A DNA stretch of 64,000 bases from IMGVR_UViG_3300009103_000001:146158-210157, one strand, 5' to 3'. Counted from the stretch's first letter, positions 8,369-48,176 are shown. The notes: generated from the letters alone by a model not told the origin. Numbers and translations: made by a program.

Positions 8369-8722
8369 ATGAAAAAATTATTATGGTTAGACGATGTTAG
8401 GGACCCATTTGTGATGTCACAATGGTTATTACAATGGGCGCCAGAATATTACTACGAAAAGGATGAAGGAACCCATGAAGTTATTTGGGTTAAACATTAT
8501 GATGGATTTGTAGATTGGATACAAGAAAATGGTTTACCAACTGAAATTGGATTTGACCATGACCTTGGTAGAACATTAAGTGGTATGGATTGTGCTAAGT
8601 GGTTGGTCGACTATTGTATCCACCATAATAAAGAAATACCACAATTTTTCGTACAAAGTGCAAACCCTGTTGGTAAACAAAATATAATAACATTACTTAA
8701 TAACGCTAAAAAACATATATAA
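8369..8722 (+). CDS. Cyclic-phosphate-processing receiver-like domain protein
   Basis: LWLDD.RDP, FDHDLG, GMDCAKWL and SANPVG motifs. Confidence 0.7.
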   Translation: MKKLLWLDDVRDPFVMSQWLLQWAPEYYYEKDEGTHEVIWVKHYDGFVDWIQENGLPTEIGFDHDLGRTLSGMDCAKWLVDYCIHHNKEIPQFFVQSANPVGKQNIITLLNNAKKHI

Positions 8723-32261: not shown

Positions 32262-32672
32262 TTGGATAGAGTTTTATTTAAATCTAATAAAATAGGTATT
32301 AAAAAATCACCCATACATGGTTGGGGTGTATTTGCATTGGAAGATATTGAAATTGGTGATTTGATTGAGGAATGTCTCTATGTTCCAATAGAAACCTATA
32401 ATGAGGGTGATGTGATAATACATTATTCATTTCCCTATCCAAGAATTTTTGGTGAGATTAAAGATAGTAATAAAAAAATAGATAAAATAATTCAAGTAAT
32501 AGTATTAGGGTATGGTTCATTATATAATCATTCTCTAACACCAAATATTGATTATGTAACTAATACTGAATTAGGTGTGTTTGAATTTATATCGTTTAAA
32601 AAAATAAAAAAAGGAGAAGAATTATTTATAAAATATCATAATAATCCAGATTTTATAAAAGAGAAAAAATAA
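32262..32672 (+). CDS. SET-domain protein (lysine methyltransferase)
   Basis: SPIHGWGVFA, YNHS..PN and IKKGEELFIKY motifs; TTG start. Confidence 0.88.
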   Translation: MDRVLFKSNKIGIKKSPIHGWGVFALEDIEIGDLIEECLYVPIETYNEGDVIIHYSFPYPRIFGEIKDSNKKIDKIIQVIVLGYGSLYNHSLTPNIDYVTNTELGVFEFISFKKIKKGEELFIKYHNNPDFIKEKK

Positions 32673-33322
32673 TGGAAGCAACATTTAAAATAAACATGGT
32701 GGATATTTGTGACATCCAATTAGGTGACCATTTTAATACATTAGTAAACAAATATTCTAATATTGCACAAACTTTAAATCCTGATAAATTTAATAAAGAA
32801 GAATTAGATTTAAACTTTCCTTATATAGAATCTAAACAACGTAAGTATTATGGTTTAGTAGAAACACTATGGAATAGTGGGTTATTAAAAGATAATATGA
32901 AAATTATAGATTTAGGTTGTGGTTTATGTACAACATTATATAATTTAAATTTACAATTTAAAAATTATAATATACCATCTAGTTTTTATGGTGTAGAATA
33001 TAATGAAGAGTTATTAAAAATATTTACCAAATATTTAAGTCCTCTTTGGGAAAATAATTTCCCTAAATTTGCTTTAGGCGATATTATGGACTGTGATTTG
33101 TCACAATACGATTTAATATTATCATATCAACCATTTAAAGATTTAGAATTATTAGAAAAAATGTATAATAAAGTTTTTAGTGAAATGAAATCTGGTTCTG
33201 TTTTTCACGAACACAATTATAAAGATAGAGAAGAAACTTTACTAAGAAGTGTCAATAATAACATTGAACCGAAAATATCTTTATTTGGTGGTGAAAAACA
33301 ACCTTTATTTATAAAAAAATGA
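32672..33322 (+). CDS. Class I SAM-dependent methyltransferase
   Basis: IDLGCG, YGVEYN, GDIMD and YDLILSY motifs. Confidence 0.8.
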   Translation: MEATFKINMVDICDIQLGDHFNTLVNKYSNIAQTLNPDKFNKEELDLNFPYIESKQRKYYGLVETLWNSGLLKDNMKIIDLGCGLCTTLYNLNLQFKNYNIPSSFYGVEYNEELLKIFTKYLSPLWENNFPKFALGDIMDCDLSQYDLILSYQPFKDLELLEKMYNKVFSEMKSGSVFHEHNYKDREETLLRSVNNNIEPKISLFGGEKQPLFIKK

Positions 33323-34266
33323 AAGCATTAGTAGTTTCAGGTGGTGGTAGCAAGGGCGCCTTTGGTGGTGGTGTTGCACAATACCTAATAGAAAAAGAAA
33401 AAAAAGAATACGATTTATTAATAGGGACTTCCACTGGTAGTTTACTTGTACCATTTATTGCCATAAAAAAAATGGATACATTAAAAGAGGCATACACAAC
33501 TGTTACCCAAAAAGATATTTTTAATGTTAACCCATTTAAAGTTAAAAGTGATGCAAATGGTGTAGTTAAAGTGGGGATTAATTTTAAAAATGTTTTATGG
33601 AATATATTGGTTAGGAGGAAGAAGTCATTTGGTGATGCAGATAATCTTAAAAAATTGATAAGGAGATTTATGAGTGAAAAAGATTATAGAAAAATAAAAG
33701 ATTCGGGTAGAGAAGTAATTTGTACCACCACAAACCTAACATTAGGTAAACCAGAATATAAATCAACAAAAGAATATGGGTATAAGGATTTTTGTGATTG
33801 GACATTAGCTTCAGCAACAGTACCACCATTTATGAGTGTGGTAGAAAAGGATGGTTATGAATATGCGGATGGAGCAATATTGGAACATGCTGCGATACAA
33901 GAAGCGATAAATAGAGGGGCGAAAGAAATAGATGTTATTATTCTTAGAAAGGAAGAAACTGAATTACCCCCAGAATTAATTAGAAATGCTTTTCACTATA
34001 TATTTAGAACAATAGATTTAATGATGTTGGAGATAGGTAGGTCTGATGTTCAGATTGGTAAATTAAAATCTAAAAAAAATGATGTTAAATTAAATTTTTA
34101 TTATACACCAAGAAAACTTACCAACAATTCTTTGATATTTAATAAAGAGAACATGTCGAGTTGGTGGGAAGAAGGTTATATGTCCGCAAGAAAGAGATTT
34201 TGTAAGTCATATAATTTATGTGGCAAGAAAAAGGCTAAGTTAACATATGATGGTACAATAGATTAA
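33319..34266 (+). CDS. Patatin-like phospholipase
   Basis: GGGSKG, GTSTG (catalytic Ser) and DGA (catalytic Asp). Confidence 0.92.
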   Translation: MKALVVSGGGSKGAFGGGVAQYLIEKEKKEYDLLIGTSTGSLLVPFIAIKKMDTLKEAYTTVTQKDIFNVNPFKVKSDANGVVKVGINFKNVLWNILVRRKKSFGDADNLKKLIRRFMSEKDYRKIKDSGREVICTTTNLTLGKPEYKSTKEYGYKDFCDWTLASATVPPFMSVVEKDGYEYADGAILEHAAIQEAINRGAKEIDVIILRKEETELPPELIRNAFHYIFRTIDLMMLEIGRSDVQIGKLKSKKNDVKLNFYYTPRKLTNNSLIFNKENMSSWWEEGYMSARKRFCKSYNLCGKKKAKLTYDGTID

Positions 34267-34415
34267 TATTCACCATAAATATCTTTCTTAGGGGTACATT
34301 TTTCTCTTATTAACTTCTCAACAAAGGAGAACATTTTAAGGCCGTTTTTTTCACAATAGTCTTTTAATAATTTATGTGAATGAGGTGTTATTTTTAGGTT
34401 TTTAGTTCTTTTCAT
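34263..34415 (-). CDS. 50-aa ribbon-helix-helix-like DNA-binding protein (not in ORF track)
   Basis: MKRTKNLKITPHSHKLLKDYCEKNGLKMFSFVEKLIREKCTPKKDIYGEY: strand, helix, Gly turn, helix. Stop interlocks (TTAA) with the patatin stop. Confidence 0.7.
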   Translation of the reverse strand: MKRTKNLKITPHSHKLLKDYCEKNGLKMFSFVEKLIREKCTPKKDIYGEY

Positions 34416-34459
34416 TAGCTTTTCTTTATAAGTATGACAAAAGTAAGACTTTTATCTCA

Positions 34460-34489
34460 TTTATTTTGTGGTATATACCACAAAATAAA
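34460..34489. promoter_or_regulatory. Perfect 30-bp palindrome TTTATTTTGTGGTAT-ATACCACAAAATAAA
   Basis: Checked base by base. Lies between the divergent RHH gene and the tail sheath gene; operator or hairpin role is inferred. Confidence 0.75.
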
Positions 34490-34553
34490 ATTTTTGGGTT
34501 TTTAAGTAATATTTATATAAAAAATAACTTAGAAACAAAAAAATAAAAATTAA

Positions 34554-37337
34554 ATGCCTGATAATAAGATATTCGTATCACCTGGTGTATTTACATCTGA
34601 AAAAGATTTAAGTTTTGTAGCCCAACAAGTTGGTGTTACCACATTAGGTGTGGCTGGAGAAACTGTAAAAGGACCAGCTTTTGAACCCATATTTATAACA
34701 AACTATGATGAATACACAACAATATTTGGTGGATTAAATCCAGCTAAATTTAGTGATAACAAACCAAAGTATGAAACATCGTATATAGCAAAAAGTTATT
34801 TATCACAATCAAATCAACTTTTTATTACAAGAATTTTAGGTCTTACTGGTTATGACGCTGGTTCGGCTTGGATGATTACAACGGACGCTAATTACGACCC
34901 AGATACAATAGTTACTGGTACTACATCAGCGTTTAGGGCTGATTTTAGTGGTGGAACAACATATTTTAATTTTACCGATACTTTTGGTCCAGGTGGAGCT
35001 GTTGACGCGATGTGGTTATATAGTTTAGGTTTATTCCCTAATGGACCAACCTTAACAACAGAAGCCGTACCTGGTATTACCACAACATACCCAGAAGGTA
35101 TTGTTTTCACAAAAACAGCACCAACAACATTTAGTGGTACTTCAGCGATAGTTACATTATTAAGTGGTTCTAGTTTAAGTGGTACTATAACTGGTACAAC
35201 TACAGATTATACAGCGACAGCATACACAGAATATGAAGGTATTGTATTAGCTATGTTAAGGTCAAGAGGTAGTGTTTCTAGTGATGTGTTATCATACGAT
35301 ACTTTACAAACAAGTGGTGGTGTTGAAATAAATATTAATGGAGCATCTACTGACCCAGAAGCTGATTTTGAATTATCCGCAACAACATCTAGTAGTGTTG
35401 TTAAATATGATGTGTCTTTAGATACTACAGCAAGAAATTATATAACTAGAGTATTGGGTACGGATTGTTTTGATAAAGACGCTTTAATATTTGTAGAAGA
35501 ACAATACCCAAATTTATTGGCAGATTTAATATCCAATAACTATATTTTAGGGTTAAATGGTACTTTAGCTTTTACAACTGATTTTGACAACTATCAACAA
35601 CAATGGCAAACACCTGAAACACCATGGGTTGTTTCTGAACTACGTGGTAATGTTGTAGATAAATTATTTAAATTTATAACAATATCGGATGGTAATTCAG
35701 CAAATAAAGAAATTAAAATTTCTATTCAAAACATTAAACCAGATACTAAACAATTTGATGTTGTTGTTAGAGAATTTTATGATACAGATTCTAGACCTTC
35801 AATTGTTGAAAGGTTTGCTAAATGTGTTATGGACCCAACTGATGACAATTATGTAGCTAGAAGAATAGGTACAGCAGATGGTGAATTTAGTTTAAGAAGT
35901 CAATATATAATGGCGGTTATGAATGAGGACGCACCAATAGACGCTTTCCCAGCAGGATTTGAAGGTTACATTGTTAGAGATTATGACGCTGGTGTTTTAC
36001 CACCTAGTTTAGTTTATAAAAACACTTATGACCCAACAAATGAAAGAATTAAAAAGGTTTATTTAGGACTTTCTAATACTGTAGGTATAGACCAAAATAT
36101 GTTTAACTGGAAAGGTTATACTAATGACAGTACACCAAATCAATGGACGGCAACAACTAGTGGTTTCCATATGGATAGTGGGGCAACTATAGCCGGTGAT
36201 TTTGTTGTTGGGTGTTGTCCTTTTAGAACTACAGCTGGAATTGAAGGTACTAATTATGAATCTATTTTCTCTAGAAAATTTACTTTCGCACCTTACTTAG
36301 GGTTTGATGGTTGGAATTGTTATAGACAATCAAGAACAAATACTGATAGGTATAAGGTTGGTAAAGCAGGGTTTACAGCAGGTTTAGCTTCAACTGAATT
36401 TACACAGTATGGTTCTGATTTAGGTAATTCAGATTATTACGCTTACTTAGAGGGTATAGAAACTTATCAAAATCCAGAAGCGGTTAATATAAACGTATTA
36501 GCAACACCTGGTATAGATTACTCAGAAAATGAAGACCTTGTAGCATTAACAATCGATATGGTGGAAGAAGATAGAGCTGATTCAGTGTATATTTTGACAT
36601 CACCAGAAGGTGTAACTTATGATAATAGTGCTCAACTAACTGGTATAGGGTTTACTACAGCAGATGTTCTAGCACCAGAAGATATTGTTGACTTATTAGA
36701 TGTGGCAGATATTGATTCTAATTATACAGCAACATATTGGCCTTGGATTCAAGAAAGAGATACAGAAAATAGTTTAAATGTTTGGTTACCACCAACATTA
36801 GAAGTTGTTAGAAATATAGCTTTAACAGATAACGTATCTTTCCCTTGGTTCGCTTCAGCTGGTTATACAAGAGGTCTTACAGAAGCTCTTCAAGCTAGAC
36901 TTAAACTTACTGAGGAAATGAGAGATACATTATATGAAGGAAGAATTAACCCAATGGCAACATTCTCAGACCAAGGGGTTGTGATTTGGGGTAATAAAAA
37001 CCTACAAATTAAAGATTCTTCTTTAGATAGACTTAACATTAGAAGATTGTTATTACAAACAAGAAAATTAATTTCAGCAGTAGCTGTTAGATTATTGTTC
37101 GAACAAAATGACCAAATAGTTAGAAATCAATTCCAAAACTTGGTTAACCCAATATTGGAAAATATTAAAAGAGAAAGAGGTTTAGCTGATTTTAGAATTC
37201 AACTATCTGATGACCCAGAAGAAATTGATAGAAATGAGTTAAGAGGTAAAATATTCTTAAAACCAGTACCTTCATTAGAATTTATTATATTAGAGTTTAA
37301 TGTAACTTCTACTGGGGCTTCTTTTGATGATGTATAA
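34554..37337 (+). CDS. Contractile tail sheath protein
   Basis: FVSPGVFTSEKDLS N-terminus; YWPWI, WFASAGYTRG, INPMATF, VIWGNKNL and LNIRRLLL. Confidence 0.95.
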   Translation: MPDNKIFVSPGVFTSEKDLSFVAQQVGVTTLGVAGETVKGPAFEPIFITNYDEYTTIFGGLNPAKFSDNKPKYETSYIAKSYLSQSNQLFITRILGLTGYDAGSAWMITTDANYDPDTIVTGTTSAFRADFSGGTTYFNFTDTFGPGGAVDAMWLYSLGLFPNGPTLTTEAVPGITTTYPEGIVFTKTAPTTFSGTSAIVTLLSGSSLSGTITGTTTDYTATAYTEYEGIVLAMLRSRGSVSSDVLSYDTLQTSGGVEININGASTDPEADFELSATTSSSVVKYDVSLDTTARNYITRVLGTDCFDKDALIFVEEQYPNLLADLISNNYILGLNGTLAFTTDFDNYQQQWQTPETPWVVSELRGNVVDKLFKFITISDGNSANKEIKISIQNIKPDTKQFDVVVREFYDTDSRPSIVERFAKCVMDPTDDNYVARRIGTADGEFSLRSQYIMAVMNEDAPIDAFPAGFEGYIVRDYDAGVLPPSLVYKNTYDPTNERIKKVYLGLSNTVGIDQNMFNWKGYTNDSTPNQWTATTSGFHMDSGATIAGDFVVGCCPFRTTAGIEGTNYESIFSRKFTFAPYLGFDGWNCYRQSRTNTDRYKVGKAGFTAGLASTEFTQYGSDLGNSDYYAYLEGIETYQNPEAVNINVLATPGIDYSENEDLVALTIDMVEEDRADSVYILTSPEGVTYDNSAQLTGIGFTTADVLAPEDIVDLLDVADIDSNYTATYWPWIQERDTENSLNVWLPPTLEVVRNIALTDNVSFPWFASAGYTRGLTEALQARLKLTEEMRDTLYEGRINPMATFSDQGVVIWGNKNLQIKDSSLDRLNIRRLLLQTRKLISAVAVRLLFEQNDQIVRNQFQNLVNPILENIKRERGLADFRIQLSDDPEEIDRNELRGKIFLKPVPSLEFIILEFNVTSTGASFDDV

Positions 37338-37346
37338 TAAAAACAA

Positions 37347-37382
37347 TAAAAAGGGGATTAAATTAATTTTTTTCCCTTTTTT
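37347..37382 (+). terminator. Possible intrinsic terminator after the sheath gene
   Basis: AAAAAGGGGA...TCCCTTTTTT, an imperfect stem with a long loop. Confidence 0.4.
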
Positions 37383-37409
37383 AATATATTTATAGTAAAA
37401 TAGAATATT

Positions 37410-38658: not shown

Positions 38659-38690
38659 AAAAAAGGTGTCTAATAGACACCTTTTTTTTT
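38659..38690. terminator. Bidirectional intrinsic terminator
   Basis: AAAAAAGGTGTCT-AAT-AGACACCTTTTTTTTT between convergent genes. Confidence 0.85.
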
Positions 38691-39033
38691 ATAACCTTAT
38701 TTCATATTTTTGTAAAATATGTTTATTATTTTCTTTTAAAATACCACTTGATTCGTAGAACACTATTAAAGTTTTATATGATAAAAAAGCCGTATCTCTA
38801 TTAAATTTTGTTATCTTATGCCAACTATATGTTAAAAAAGACAGTATAAGTACTGGTAAATAAAACATATAACTATATCCTAATAAAAATATAAGTATAG
38901 ATATAATAAATTGTGACATAAAATGATTAAATCTAGTATTAGATTTATCGGTTAATTTATTAACATCATCAACAGATTCTTTTATTTGTGAATCCATTAA
39001 TTTTAATATTTCAATATCATTCATTTTAACCAT
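38689..39033 (-). CDS. Small membrane protein
   Basis: Hydrophobic segment QFIISILIFLLGYSYMFYLPVLILSFLTY; host-type promoter upstream. Confidence 0.65.
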   Translation of the reverse strand: MVKMNDIEILKLMDSQIKESVDDVNKLTDKSNTRFNHFMSQFIISILIFLLGYSYMFYLPVLILSFLTYSWHKITKFNRDTAFLSYKTLIVFYESSGILKENNKHILQKYEIRL

Positions 39034-42648: not shown

Positions 42649-43338
42649 TTATTTTTTGTTAGGTTTTCCAATAACCTCATCAATAATTCCATAGTCTAAA
42701 GCCTCATTAGCACTTAACCATAAATCTCTTTGAGCGTCTTTTTCAACTCTTTTAGCGGTTTTACCACAATAACCGGCTAATAATTCAAATAATTCCTTAT
42801 TTATTTTCTCCCACTCGTCAAACCCAATTCTAGCGTCTATTATGTTTCCGCCAACACCACCACTTGATTGGTGTAACATTGTTCTTGAGTGTTTTAGTGA
42901 ACTTCTCATACCCTTTGTACCCGCTCCAAGTAATAATGAACCCATTGAAGCGGCCATACCAGTATTAATTGTCTGTATGTCCGCGTCAATATAACTCATA
43001 ACATCTATCATAGATAATCCAGCTTTAACTGAACCACCTGGTGAGTCAATATGCATTGTTATTGTTTTGTTTGGGTCTTGTTGTGATAAGAATAGTAGTT
43101 GTGCTTGTACTATAATAGCCATCCTATCGTCTACTGGTCCAGCACACCATATAATTCTGTCCATCATTAGTCTGTCAAAAACAGACATTGCGGCCACATT
43201 TAATTGACGTTCTTCTATAATTGTAGGTGTTACTGAATATTCTATGTTTGGAACCTTGGATTGTAGGTTTTGATAACTGTGTAGTGTATTTGAATTTACA
43301 TTCAAATGTTTTGTTGCGTAATTATTAAATTCTGACAT
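42649..43338 (-). CDS. clpP: ATP-dependent Clp protease proteolytic subunit
   Basis: EERQ..VFDRLMMDRII, IDSPGGSV, AASMG (Ser), MLHQ (His), GG..G handle and RDLWLSA.EALDYG.ID. Confidence 0.93.
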   Translation of the reverse strand: MSEFNNYATKHLNVNSNTLHSYQNLQSKVPNIEYSVTPTIIEERQLNVAAMSVFDRLMMDRIIWCAGPVDDRMAIIVQAQLLFLSQQDPNKTITMHIDSPGGSVKAGLSMIDVMSYIDADIQTINTGMAASMGSLLLGAGTKGMRSSLKHSRTMLHQSSGGVGGNIIDARIGFDEWEKINKELFELLAGYCGKTAKRVEKDAQRDLWLSANEALDYGIIDEVIGKPNKK

Positions 43339-46978: not shown

Positions 46979-47006
46979 ATCCTCTTTTTTTAAGAGGATT
47001 TTTTTT
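46979..47006 (+). terminator. Intrinsic terminator after the tube gene
   Basis: ATCCTCTT-TTTTT-AAGAGGAT followed by a T run. Confidence 0.7.
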
Positions 47007-47150: not shown

Positions 47151-48176
47151 TTACCAATCGAATTTTATGTCATTTGGTGAGTCATAGTACCTCACTGAAT
47201 AACCACCATTAAAATCGTCATAATCCCACATGTCATCGAAATCATCATTAGATTCAAACCTAGTGATATCCTCTACAGTTTCATCGTCTTCGTCATCACC
47301 CAACCACTCAAAATCATCAACATAGTGTTGTTCTTCCGAATGATTTTCAGATATAGGAGTACGACCAAACATAGAGGACCATAGGTTTTTCTTTGGTTTA
47401 TCGGACCTAACATATTTAGCTTCACCTAAAACATCAACTATTTTAAGACCCAATTCGAAAGCGTTTTCAACATCCTCAACAAGGACATATTCACTTTTGG
47501 TGTGATACCTATAGTACCCCGCCGCTAAGTTAAGACAAGAGAAATCGAATTTTTCGATTAACTGCCATATGTCAGTGTAAGGATGTTTAGCCCAATCATT
47601 AATACCGTGTTCAAGTATTAAAGGGCTCACTTTCTTACCAAAGTCGGTGTCAACACCAAACAAGTCCTTACTCATTAGAGACATACTCATAGAGTTTCCC
47701 TCTGGGGAGTCGTATTGAATGGCGTAACCGACATCTTTGAAGAATTGTGGGTCCGCGTAACGAGAACCCAAACACCCAATCTCTTCTGATACAAAAAAGG
47801 CAGCTTTAACGTTGTCCAATTTGTCCAACATCTCAAGACAAAGAAAGACACCACACTTATCGTCACCACCGATACCCGATGGCTCCTTAGTTTCACTGTC
47901 AATTCCAGTCAAGGTTAACCTACCTTGTTTGTCACTAGATTCTACAACTTTTAGATTATGGTTGATGTGATGAACGGTATCAGTATGAGAAACAAAACAA
48001 GGATAAAACTCTGCCTCACCTTTTGTAACATACACATTATTGTGTCCATCGATTGTATAATCGAAGCCTTTCTCTTCCAAAACGTCCTTTAGGTATTGAA
48101 CCATAAGGTCTTCTTCCCTTGAATGTGTCGGAACAGAAAGAACCTCTTTTAATCTATTTAATTTACTTTCAGTCAT
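47151..48176 (-). CDS. M20/M28-like zinc peptidase
   Basis: SHTDTVH, GGDDKCGV, VSEEIG and YTD motifs; final YH. Confidence 0.8.
   Translation of the reverse strand: MTESKLNRLKEVLSVPTHSREEDLMVQYLKDVLEEKGFDYTIDGHNNVYVTKGEAEFYPCFVSHTDTVHHINHNLKVVESSDKQGRLTLTGIDSETKEPSGIGGDDKCGVFLCLEMLDKLDNVKAAFFVSEEIGCLGSRYADPQFFKDVGYAIQYDSPEGNSMSMSLMSKDLFGVDTDFGKKVSPLILEHGINDWAKHPYTDIWQLIEKFDFSCLNLAAGYYRYHTKSEYVLVEDVENAFELGLKIVDVLGEAKYVRSDKPKKNLWSSMFGRTPISENHSEEQHYVDDFEWLGDDEDDETVEDITRFESNDDFDDMWDYDDFNGGYSVRYYDSPNDIKFDW

What the first reader, a model, noticed from the sequence alone, without database searches (positions are those of the whole stretch)
34263..34516. Hidden RHH regulator facing a perfect 30-bp palindrome at the head of the tail-sheath operon
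Seen: a 50-aa RHH-pattern ORF missed by the track, divergent from the sheath gene. Between them is TTTATTTTGTGGTATATACCACAAAATAAA, a zero-mismatch palindrome 44 nt from the RHH start and 19 nt from the ATATTTAT motif. Known: RHH proteins (Arc/MetJ/CopG) bind operators as dimers of dimers and often autoregulate. Inference: a dedicated switch tuning tail morphogenesis. Alternatives are an RNA hairpin/terminator or a cruciform.
Basis: partly seen in the sequence, partly recalled or inferred. Interest (0 to 1): 0.66.

Follow-up and report, generated by a model that had tools for sequence, protein, structure and literature searches.

The report
Phage RHH repressor gene beside palindrome
A small, strongly conserved DNA-binding (ribbon-helix-helix) gene does sit back-to-back with the tail-sheath gene of this uncultured jumbo phage, but comparison with about 90 relatives indicates that its likely binding site is a set of 11-bp repeats next to its own start, not the perfect 30-bp palindrome, which is a lineage-variable hairpin element of uncertain, possibly terminator-like, role.

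Summary
The 50-aa ORF (34263-34415, minus strand) is a true gene. Over 200 viral contigs encode it at 74-86% identity. In almost every relative checked it lies divergent from the sheath gene. Model, fold matches and sub-threshold family hits all point to ribbon-helix-helix (RHH). The palindrome (34460-34489) is perfect, unique, and the longest in the 210-kb record.

The proposed link between the two is not supported. Phages with identical RHH DNA-reading residues carry eight or more different palindromes at this position, or none. What tracks the protein is an array of 11-bp repeats (34429-34461; AGTATGA heptads) between the ORF start and the palindrome. It overlaps a flavobacterial-type -7 box, occurs once per genome, and changes sequence in the clade where the protein's N-terminus changes.

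Best reading: a local autorepressor acting on the repeat array. The palindrome is a separate element. Here it has the anatomy of a rightward intrinsic terminator just ahead of the sheath promoter motif ATATTTAT, but that anatomy is poor in most relatives, so its role stays open.

This is an ordinary kind of regulator in an uncultured, probably Bacteroidota-infecting, phage clade. Interest is modest.

The parts
34263..34415 (-). 50-aa ribbon-helix-helix-like gene. Predicted extended N-terminus 1-10, helix 11-24, helix 28-39 and a conserved tail ...PKKDIYGEY. Invariant residues K5 N6 K8 I9 H14 L17 K18 C21 G25 E33 I36 C40 D45 Y47.
   Evidence: ORF list. 214 viral contigs at 74-86% aa identity and 217 protein clusters. 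Alignment A1. AF2 model at pLDDT 75. Foldseek and VIA top hits are nearly all RHH proteins, Z 5.0-5.6. PHROG Arc-like repressor E 0.001. PF10723 at E<=0.01 in 81 of 92 members.
34263..34266 (.). 4-nt overlap (TTAA) of the convergent stop codons of the patatin-like gene (+) and the RHH gene (-). There is no room for a terminator between them.
   Evidence: In relatives the gene on the 3' side is on the + strand in 79 of 81 unique loci where one was found, and often shows the same -4 overlap.
34429..34461 (.). Three 11-bp repeats: TAAGTATGACA / AAAGTAAGACT / TTTATCTCATT. They contain heptads H1 AGTATGA (34431-37) and H2 AGTAAGA (34442-48), plus a degenerate inverted H3 (consensus TCATACT; TCTCATT here). 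This is the proposed RHH operator.
   Evidence: Conserved block AAGTATGA-Y-AAAAGTATGA-N6-TCATACT in 90 aligned intergenic regions. Autocorrelation peaks at lag 11 in all three clades and not in the sheath-proximal control. Relatives carry 3-5 repeats. The repeat sequence changes to TTCTGCC/TTCTACC plus inverted GGTGAGAA in the clade whose protein N-terminus changes. The array is unique in this record and in a complete 288-kb relative.
34438..34445 (-). TACTTTTG on the minus strand. It matches the flavobacterial sigma-A -7 box TAnnTTTG and lies 22 nt upstream of the RHH ATG, inside repeat 2. It is a candidate RHH promoter element, but no -33 TTTG sits at the expected distance.
   Evidence: Read from the sequence. 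Consensus from PMC9723704. The same record has TTTG-N19/20-TATATTTG upstream of other genes. Promoter function is inferred only.
34460..34489 (.). Perfect 30-bp palindrome TTTATTTTGTGGTAT|ATACCACAAAATAAA. As RNA it forms a 13-bp stem with a 4-nt loop.
   Evidence: RNA fold -14.9 kcal/mol, z -4.1 on the + strand, and -17.0, z -5.9 on the - strand. Relatives have a palindrome at the same place with a different sequence, or none.
34490..34503 (+). T-rich tract ATTTTTGGGTTTTT directly after the palindrome. It includes the conserved (T)AnTTTT(G/C) box (AATTTTTG, 34489-96) that lies 12-13 nt before ATATTTAT in all relatives.
   Evidence: Terminator-like call on the + strand. Tail score 2.49, close to the 90th percentile (2.66) of the intergenic background. 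The box is also conserved in relatives without a hairpin, as TACTTTTG.
34509..34516 (+). ATATTTAT, the phage-specific promoter-like motif of the sheath gene. It ends 37 nt before the ATG at 34554.
   Evidence: Invariant in the aligned relatives. Found 5-61 nt upstream of 43 ORFs in the record, with a positional peak at -30 to -11.
34554..37337 (+). Tail sheath gene, 927 aa.
   Evidence: Pfam Phage_sheath_1 and Phage_sheath_1C. tblastn hits to sheath genes of phages.
33319..34266 (+). Patatin-like phospholipase gene, last gene of the upstream + strand block. Its read-through transcript would run antisense across the RHH gene and reach the palindrome.
   Evidence: Pfam Patatin E 3.6e-24. It is not a conserved neighbour in most relatives.

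Best explanation
The ORF encodes a small ribbon-helix-helix DNA-binding protein. It is conserved in a large clade of uncultured jumbo myoviruses, whose host is probably a member of the Bacteroidota.

Its most likely target is not the palindrome. It is the array of three 11-bp repeats (heptads AGTATGA, AGTAAGA and a degenerate inverted copy, 34429-34461) between its start codon and the palindrome. RHH dimers spaced one helical turn apart on this array would cover the -7-like box TACTTTTG of the gene's own promoter and shut it off. This is local autorepression, as in Arc, CopG and omega.

The 30-bp palindrome is a separate, lineage-variable, self-complementary element. In this phage it is followed by ATTTTTGGGTTTTT and has the anatomy of a rightward intrinsic terminator. 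It would stop read-through from the upstream + strand block, which must cross the RHH gene in antisense, just before the sheath gene restarts from its own ATATTTAT promoter.

Shown: the gene is real, the fold is RHH-like, the synteny holds, the repeats exist and track the protein, and the palindrome varies independently of the protein. Inferred: binding, repression, promoter assignments and termination.
For: RHH fold:
- PHROG Arc-like repressor E 0.001 and 0.0024.
- PF10723 at E<=0.01 in 81 of 92 family members, and Omega_Repress in 6.
- The AF2 model has an extended N-terminus and two helices.
- Foldseek and VIA hits are almost exclusively RHH domains such as CopA(SO), PutA, omega, NikR, CopG and Arc, with Z 4.3-5.6 over 40-49 residues.

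Gene reality and synteny.

Repeat array:
- Conserved AAGTATGA-Y-AAAAGTATGA-N6-TCATACT block.
- Lag-11 autocorrelation of 0.43-0.47 against about 0.3 at other lags in all three clades, with no lag-11 peak in the sheath-proximal control.
- Three to five iterons in relatives.
- Where the protein changes from MKR[DT]KN[LI]KIT to K-E-I-K-N-I-K-I-[SD], all three sub-sites change together, to TTCTGCC/TTCTACC plus inverted GGTGAGAA.
- One copy per genome, including a complete 287,855-bp relative.
- It overlaps TACTTTTG, which matches TAnnTTTG.

Palindrome independent of the protein: identical N-terminal 11-mers go with 8-10 different palindromes or none.

Terminator-like anatomy here:
- Scan hit on the + strand.
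- Stable hairpin, z -4.1, and tail score 2.49.
- Within the KNLKIT clade a T-run of 5 or more accompanies the hairpin in 21 of 31 loci, against 2 of 21 without it.
- A terminator followed by ATATTTAT recurs at 37348-37393 and elsewhere in the record.
Against: - No binding or transcript data exist. No RNA run holds this sequence.
- Every single RHH sequence match is below curated thresholds: Pfam 17.4 bits against a cutoff of 21, Foldseek E>0.2.
- The conserved repeats could partly be promoter elements rather than operator sites.
- No -33 TTTG lies at the expected distance from TACTTTTG.

Against the terminator part:
- In most hairpin-bearing relatives 3-10 A-rich nt separate the stem from the T-run. 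The median tail score, 0.94, equals the background median.
- The T box is anchored to ATATTTAT and is kept in relatives without a hairpin.
- The record's clear terminators have the opposite polarity, with a 5' A-run, a contiguous GC core and a 3' T-run.
- The hairpin/T-run association is not corrected for shared ancestry.
- Over half of the relatives with the same convergent gene layout have no hairpin.
Confidence: 0.45

Rival explanations
1. The palindrome is the operator of this RHH protein, bound as a dimer of dimers, and it tunes transcription of the sheath operon and of the RHH gene itself.
For: The palindrome lies between the two divergent genes, is perfect, and is unique in the record. 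RHH proteins commonly bind symmetric or repeated sites (established knowledge). The RHH-sheath synteny is deeply conserved. The palindrome abuts the third 11-bp repeat.
Against: The palindrome sequence differs (GTGGTAT, GTTGTTAT, ATGGTTT, GTGTTAT, CTATTAT, GGGTAT and others) or is absent among phages whose RHH N-terminus and beta-strand are identical. All KNIKIT-type and distant-clade relatives lack it yet keep both gene and synteny. Its half-site bears no resemblance to the conserved heptads. GTGGTAT is not organised into other sites in the genome.
Confidence: 0.1
2. The palindrome is the operator of a different dimeric regulator, from the phage or the host, acting on rightward transcription. 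It spans the -33 box and spacer of a possible sigma-A-type promoter: TTTG at 34465-68, a 20-nt gap, then AATTTTTG at 34489-96. Its centre also lies about 34-35 nt upstream of ATATTTAT, at the same distance in nearly all hairpin-bearing relatives.
For: - Both arms change together while position is fixed.
- The 5' arm is T/G-rich on both strands, and TGT...ACA outer positions are common.
- The record uses TTTG-N19/20-TATATTTG promoters.
- The element occurs once per genome, as expected of a locus-specific operator rather than a general terminator family.
Against: No candidate protein was identified. The -7-like box has A instead of T at its first position. The spacing is 17 rather than 19-21 nt in several relatives (read from the sequences). 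Many relatives lack the palindrome altogether.
Confidence: 0.2
3. The palindrome has no dedicated function. It is a neutral AT-rich quasi-palindrome kept perfect by hairpin-templated correction during replication, and it decays in some lineages.
For: It is present in only about a third of unique intergenic regions. Decayed versions exist (L011, L101/L103, L100). No G-T wobble cells were seen that would point to selection at the RNA level. Stems in several relatives are very weak, from -1.8 to -5 kcal/mol.
Against: Palindromes with arms of 10-15 nt occur at the same place in several subclades. The position is fixed relative to flanking conserved blocks. The hairpin is associated with a longer T-run.
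Confidence: 0.15

Closest known systems
Arc and Mnt repressors of Salmonella phage P22 (RHH; immI region)
   Same: A protein of about 50 aa with an N-terminal strand and two helices. It is phage-encoded, sits in a divergent promoter region, and has sub-sites one helical turn (11 bp) apart that overlap its own promoter. Arc chains are among the best structural matches: 1b28, 1baz, 1myl, at Z about 4.3-4.6 and about 20-24% identity.
   Different: No significant sequence similarity (PDB profile search E=1). The candidate operator here is 3-5 direct and inverted 11-bp repeats, not one 21-bp symmetric site. The neighbouring gene is a tail sheath, not an antirepressor. The phage is a virulent-looking jumbo phage, with no immunity region identified.
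Omega repressor (pSM19035, inc18 plasmids) and ParG
   Same: RHH dimers bind cooperatively to arrays of 7-bp heptads in direct and inverted orientation upstream of their own genes. Omega_Repress is matched by 6 of 92 members, and 1irq has Z 5.1.
   Different: Omega heptads are contiguous (7-bp period), while the period here is 11 bp. There is no partition or toxin-antitoxin cassette nearby.
CopG / RepB-RCR_reg (PF10723) plasmid copy-control RHH proteins
   Same: Best Pfam family, matched at E<=0.01 by 81 of 92 members with best E 1.6e-4. These are small autoregulators that cover their own promoter.
   Different: The window protein scores 17.4 bits against a gathering cutoff of 21. There is no Rep gene or rolling-circle origin nearby, and the context is a phage structural module.
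Intrinsic (rho-independent) terminators placed just ahead of late promoters, as in T4-type phages and elsewhere in this record
   Same: A hairpin, then a T-run, then the promoter motif, as at 37348-37393 after the sheath gene.
   Different: The stem has only 3 G-C pairs. Its A/T flanks have the opposite polarity to the record's clear terminators. Most relatives have a poor T-tail directly after the stem.

Membership tests
Ribbon-helix-helix (MetJ/Arc/CopG) superfamily | Topology of about 45 residues: an N-terminal beta-strand followed by two alpha-helices | tested here: met
   The AF2 monomer model has residues 1-10 extended, helix 11-24 and helix 28-39, at mean pLDDT 75. The strand itself only forms in the dimer, so it appears as coil. 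VIA gives Z 5.0-5.6 over 41-46 residues to RHH domains, and the top 50 rows are almost all RHH.
Ribbon-helix-helix (MetJ/Arc/CopG) superfamily | Sequence match to a curated RHH family above its threshold | tested here: inconclusive
   The window protein scores 17.4 bits on PF10723 against a cutoff of 21, E 0.0043. 81 of 92 homologues match at E<=0.01, best 1.6e-4. Many database homologues carry a precomputed PF10723 hit. PHROG Arc-like repressor families give E 0.001 and 0.0024. The PDB profile search gives Arc at E=1 and SvtR (2kel) at E=0.24.
Ribbon-helix-helix (MetJ/Arc/CopG) superfamily | Glycine-containing turn between the two helices (G-x-S/T/N; from memory of the family) | tested here: inconclusive
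   G25 is invariant in 92 sequences and lies in the predicted inter-helix turn, residues 25-27. The third position is K27, not S/T/N.
Ribbon-helix-helix (MetJ/Arc/CopG) superfamily | Obligate homodimer forming a two-stranded antiparallel beta-ribbon | tested here: inconclusive
   The homodimer prediction gave no verdict: score 0.38 against a mark of 0.42, controls 0.00. This is not evidence either way.
Ribbon-helix-helix (MetJ/Arc/CopG) superfamily | Sequence-specific binding to repeated or symmetric operator sub-sites | not testable with these tools
   Candidate sub-sites exist, namely the 11-bp repeats at 34429-34461 that co-vary with the protein clade. Binding needs EMSA or footprinting.
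RHH antitoxin of a type II toxin-antitoxin pair | A co-directional toxin gene immediately adjacent in the same operon | tested here: not met
   The gene is a lone minus-strand ORF. Its 3' neighbour is a convergent + strand gene in 79 of 81 unique loci, and its 5' neighbour is the divergent sheath gene.
Intrinsic (rho-independent) terminator | A stable stem-loop immediately followed by a U-rich tract on the transcribed strand, downstream of a co-directional gene | tested here: met
   This holds for the window only. The stem has 13 bp and a 4-nt loop, -14.9 kcal/mol, z -4.1. ATTTTTGGGTTTTT follows after 0-1 nt, with tail score 2.49. The patatin gene ends 193 nt upstream on the same strand.
Intrinsic (rho-independent) terminator | The same stem-plus-U-tract anatomy conserved in relatives, and resemblance to the genome's other terminators | tested here: not met
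   The median tail score of 31 hairpin-bearing relatives is 0.94, equal to the background median. More than half of the relatives have no hairpin. The record's clear terminators have a 5' A-run, GC core and 3' T-run, the opposite polarity.

The most novel reading that the evidence does not exclude
The RHH gene, its 11-bp iteron array and the adjacent palindrome or T-box together form a conserved timing switch at the left edge of the tail module of a large uncultured clade of Bacteroidota jumbo phages. In this reading the early-made RHH covers host-type (TAnnTTTG-like) promoter elements in both directions. Late read-through from the upstream operon then crosses the RHH gene in antisense and silences it, because the convergent stop codons overlap by 4 nt. 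The palindrome sets how much of that read-through enters the sheath operon.
Probability: 0.12. Interest if true: 0.55.

Novelty: new member of a known kind. Interest (0 to 1): 0.33.

Why it matters
If confirmed, this would be the first assigned regulator in a very widespread clade of jumbo phages. The clade has more than 200 contigs, genomes up to about 300 kb, no cultured relative in the phage database and largely unannotated genes.

The region is compact and well defined: iterons, a host-type -7 box and a phage-specific ATATTTAT promoter class. That would give an entry point to the early/late transcription programme of phages of the Bacteroidota, which is poorly known.

As a mechanism, an RHH autorepressor on repeated sub-sites is textbook, so the finding is useful annotation rather than a surprise.

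Tried and rejected
- DNA and protein searches of cultured phages found nothing for the region or the RHH. Only distant sheath homologues turned up, 31-34% identical.
- The homodimer prediction returned no verdict. It is not used as evidence.
- The sequencing-run search found no RNA holder, only contigs with a 6% word share from brine or seawater studies. Read laying was therefore not run, because contigs cannot show RNA ends.
- The PDB profile search was topped by spurious local SUMO matches to LKxYCexxGL.
- Testing the terminator idea by the orientation of the gene on the RHH's 3' side was uninformative, because that gene is on the + strand almost everywhere.
- I looked for G-U wobble cells that would reveal which RNA strand is under selection. 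None were found.
- The pair count is biased, because the sequences were chosen for having a palindrome.
- Leftward sigma-A-type promoter models that use the palindrome's TTTG as a -33 box were rejected: the gap to TACTTTTG is 35 nt.
- A replication-origin reading (iterons plus hairpin) was considered. It has no support from GC skew or from neighbouring genes.
- A toxin-antitoxin reading was rejected because there is no partner gene.

Full report
**1. Context**

The window is bases 146158-210157 of a 210-kb IMG/VR virus record estimated 64% complete. It has about 30% G+C. Long + strand blocks of large, mostly unannotated genes are interrupted by a few minus-strand genes.

The 927-aa ORF at 34554-37337 is a tail sheath (Pfam Phage_sheath_1 and 1C). 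Its nearest cultured relatives are only 31-34% identical: Microcystis phage Mel-JY01 and Flavobacterium phage immuto. The region has no DNA match among cultured phages.

**2.

The ORF 34263-34415 (-) and the palindrome 34460-34489 are exactly as described, as are the 44-nt and 19-nt distances. A perfect 15+15 palindrome is far beyond chance: simulated 64-kb sequences reached arms of only 8-11 nt. It is the longest perfect palindrome of the whole record.

**3. The ORF is a real, conserved gene with an RHH-like fold**

- tblastn found 214 viral contigs encoding it at 74-86% identity.
- The word search found 217 protein clusters, on contigs up to about 300 kb, nearly all named hypothetical.
- There was no hit in cultured phages.
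- In 92 distinct sequences, 14 positions are invariant.

The evidence for the fold is individually sub-threshold but unanimous:
- PHROG Arc-like repressor families at E 0.001 and 0.0024.
- PF10723 RepB-RCR_reg at 17.4 bits (cutoff 21) for the window protein. It is matched at E<=0.01 by 81 of 92 homologues, and Omega_Repress by 6.
- An AF2 model with an extended N-terminus and helices 11-24 and 28-39, pLDDT 75.
- Foldseek and VIA lists made up almost entirely of RHH domains, Z 4.3-5.6 over 40-49 residues.

The homodimer prediction gave no verdict.

**4. Synteny**

In 147 fetched loci the gene lies divergent from the sheath gene, with an intergenic region of about 130-160 nt. This holds down to 44% sheath identity.

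On its 3' side the gene converges with a + strand gene in 79 of 81 unique loci. Often the same 4-nt stop-codon overlap is present. The identity of that neighbour varies, and patatin is present in only a minority. So the gene is a lone reverse-oriented gene fixed to the left edge of the tail module.

A few distant relatives lack it and keep ATATTTAT in front of the sheath gene.

**5. Anatomy of the intergenic region, from 90 unique aligned relatives**

Reading the + strand from the RHH start:
- (a) A conserved block AAGTATGA-Y-AAAAGTATGA-N6-TCATACT.
- (b) A variable zone of about 25-30 nt.
- (c) A conserved (T)AnTTTT(G/C) box.
- (d) After 12-13 nt, the invariant ATATTTAT.
- (e) An A-rich leader to the sheath ATG.

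The palindrome occupies zone (b).

**6. The palindrome does not track the protein**

At the same position, relatives carry palindromes with different cores: GTGGTAT/ATACCAC, GTTGTTAT/ATAACAAC, ATGGTTT/AAACCAT, GTGTTAT/ATAACAC, CTATTAT/ATAATAG, GGGTAT..ATACCC and others. In 23 distinct sequences the five core columns are 100% Watson-Crick, with 2-4 pair types each. That count is biased, because the sequences were picked for having a palindrome.

Phages with the identical N-terminal 11-mer (MKRTKNLKITP or MKRDKNLKITP), which includes the presumed DNA-reading strand, have 8-10 different palindromes, or none. All KNIKIT-type and distant-clade relatives have none. A sequence-specific operator for this protein should not behave like that.

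**7. What does track the protein**

Block (a) is an array of 11-bp repeats:
- Autocorrelation of the RHH-proximal 60 nt peaks at lag 11 (0.43-0.47 against about 0.3) in all three clades. The sheath-proximal control shows no lag-11 peak.
- Some relatives have four or five repeats.
- In the window the repeats are TAAGTATGACA / AAAGTAAGACT / TTTATCTCATT (34429-34461), and the third, inverted copy is degenerate.
- In the distant clade the protein N-terminus reads ...KEIKNIKI[SD] instead of MKR[DT]KN[LI]KIT. There the two direct copies become TTCTGCC and TTCTACC, and in several members the inverted copy becomes the matching GGTGAGAA or GGCAGAA.
- The tandem heptad pattern occurs once in this record and once in a complete 287,855-bp relative with terminal repeats, directly upstream of the gene.
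- On the gene's sense strand, repeat 2 contains TACTTTTG. This matches the flavobacterial sigma-A -7 consensus TAnnTTTG (PMC9723704).

One-turn spacing of sub-sites that overlap the protein's own promoter is the classic RHH autorepressor layout (Arc, CopG, omega; established knowledge). Binding and repression are inferred, not shown.

**8. Host and promoter classes**

TTTG-N19/20-TATATTTG or TATCTTTG lies upstream of about 8-11 genes. In the window these include minus-strand genes such as the prohead protease (42649-43338) and a peptidase (47151-48176). ATATTTAT lies 5-61 nt upstream of 43 ORFs, including the sheath gene. Shine-Dalgarno-like words are not enriched before starts.

Together these point to a Bacteroidota host with an early, host-type promoter class and a phage-specific class. 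This is an inference. The sequencing-run search points to saline waters.

**9. What the palindrome might be**

In favour of a rightward intrinsic terminator:
- The scan calls it one.
- The RNA hairpin is stable, -14.9 kcal/mol, z -4.1.
- ATTTTTGGGTTTTT follows at once, with tail score 2.49, close to the background 90th percentile of 2.66.
- The upstream + strand block has no other place to terminate, because the convergent genes overlap.
- A terminator followed by ATATTTAT recurs in the record, at 37348-37393 and elsewhere.
- Within the KNLKIT clade, hairpins go with T-runs of 5 or more (21 of 31 against 2 of 21; Fisher 4e-5, not corrected for ancestry).

Against:
- In most hairpin-bearing relatives the T-run is 3-10 A-rich nt away from the stem, and the median tail score equals background.
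- The T box is anchored to ATATTTAT and is kept, as TACTTTTG, where there is no hairpin.
- The record's clear terminators have the opposite flank polarity and contiguous GC cores.
- Most relatives manage without any hairpin.
- The element is single-copy per genome. That suits a locus-specific protein site as well as it suits a terminator.

Alternatives that remain open:
- An operator for another dimeric regulator. It would overlap a possible rightward sigma-A-type promoter (TTTG 34465-68, 20 nt, AATTTTTG 34489-96), or sit about 34-35 nt upstream of ATATTTAT.
- A functionless quasi-palindrome kept perfect by templated correction.

**10. Verdict**

The specific pairing of RHH with the palindrome is not supported.

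The best-supported model is an autoregulated RHH acting on 11-bp iterons, with the palindrome a separate, lineage-variable element that in this phage looks like a rightward terminator. This is a new member of a known kind. Interest is modest, and rests mainly on giving a handle on an abundant, uncultured phage clade.

Noticed in passing
window 38689-39033(-), 42649-43338(-), 47151-48176(-), 8369-8722(+), and others in the record: A class of Bacteroidota-type promoters (TTTG, 19-20 nt, TATATTTG or TATCTTTG) lies 13-49 nt upstream of about 8-11 genes. In the window these are mostly the minus-strand genes set among + strand structural blocks, including a prohead protease and a peptidase. It suggests a Bacteroidota host and a host-RNA-polymerase-dependent gene class.
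   Followed up: partly
whole record; in the window e.g. 10599, 24290, 26767, 34509, 37386, 39072, 43375, 46425, 49278, 53764 (+) and 3058, 7511 (-): ATATTTAT, usually followed by (A/T)A(T/A)AAAA, lies 5-61 nt upstream of 43 ORFs. It differs from the host-type TATATTTG box mainly by G to A plus an added T. This recalls the relation between T4 late promoters (TATAAATA) and the sigma-70 -10 box. It is probably the phage's late promoter class. Many of the implied leaders would be very short.
   Followed up: partly
window 37348-37381, 38659-38687, 46979-46999: These are clear terminator-type hairpins with a 5' A-run, a GC core and a 3' T-run. The first follows the sheath gene and lies 4 nt before the next ATATTTAT. 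The second lies between convergent genes and looks bidirectional.
   Followed up: partly
window 32262-34266 (+): A SET-domain protein (32262-32672), a SAM-dependent methyltransferase (32672-33322) and a patatin-like phospholipase (33319-34266) sit between large structural genes and the tail module. The patatin gene is present in only a minority of relatives, at 38-91% identity, so this stretch is a variable accessory region.
   Followed up: no
window 34263-34415 (protein residues 14, 21, 40, 45, 47): H14, C21, C40, D45 and Y47 are invariant in 92 homologues, and the C-terminal tail (P/K)K(K/T)D(I/L)YGE is conserved beyond the RHH core. This hints at a metal or redox site, or at a partner-binding tail.
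   Followed up: no
L110 (contig IMGVR_UViG_3300042868_007959; G002:201038 and 202184): In this relative about 2.4 kb is inserted between the RHH gene and the sheath gene, and two further copies of the tandem heptad motif lie inside the inserted stretch.
   Followed up: no
L145-L147, L152 (intergenic 258-278 nt); also L015/L045 (354 nt), L083 (208 nt), L088 (634 nt): These are longer intergenic variants. In L145 the extra DNA next to the RHH start holds a direct repeat GGGGTAAATTTG x2. These relatives also have a patatin gene 91% identical to the window's.
   Followed up: no
L043, L046, L047, L053, L054, L068 (upstream of the sheath gene): These distant relatives (sheath 44-53% identical) lack the RHH gene. 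The sheath gene directly follows a + strand gene, still with (A/G)ATATTTAT, which is preceded by weak A/T hairpins and T-runs.
   Followed up: partly
L133 record (G004): IMG/VR classes this 198-kb relative as a provirus, whereas a 288-kb relative has direct terminal repeats. The lifestyle of the clade may be worth checking.
   Followed up: no
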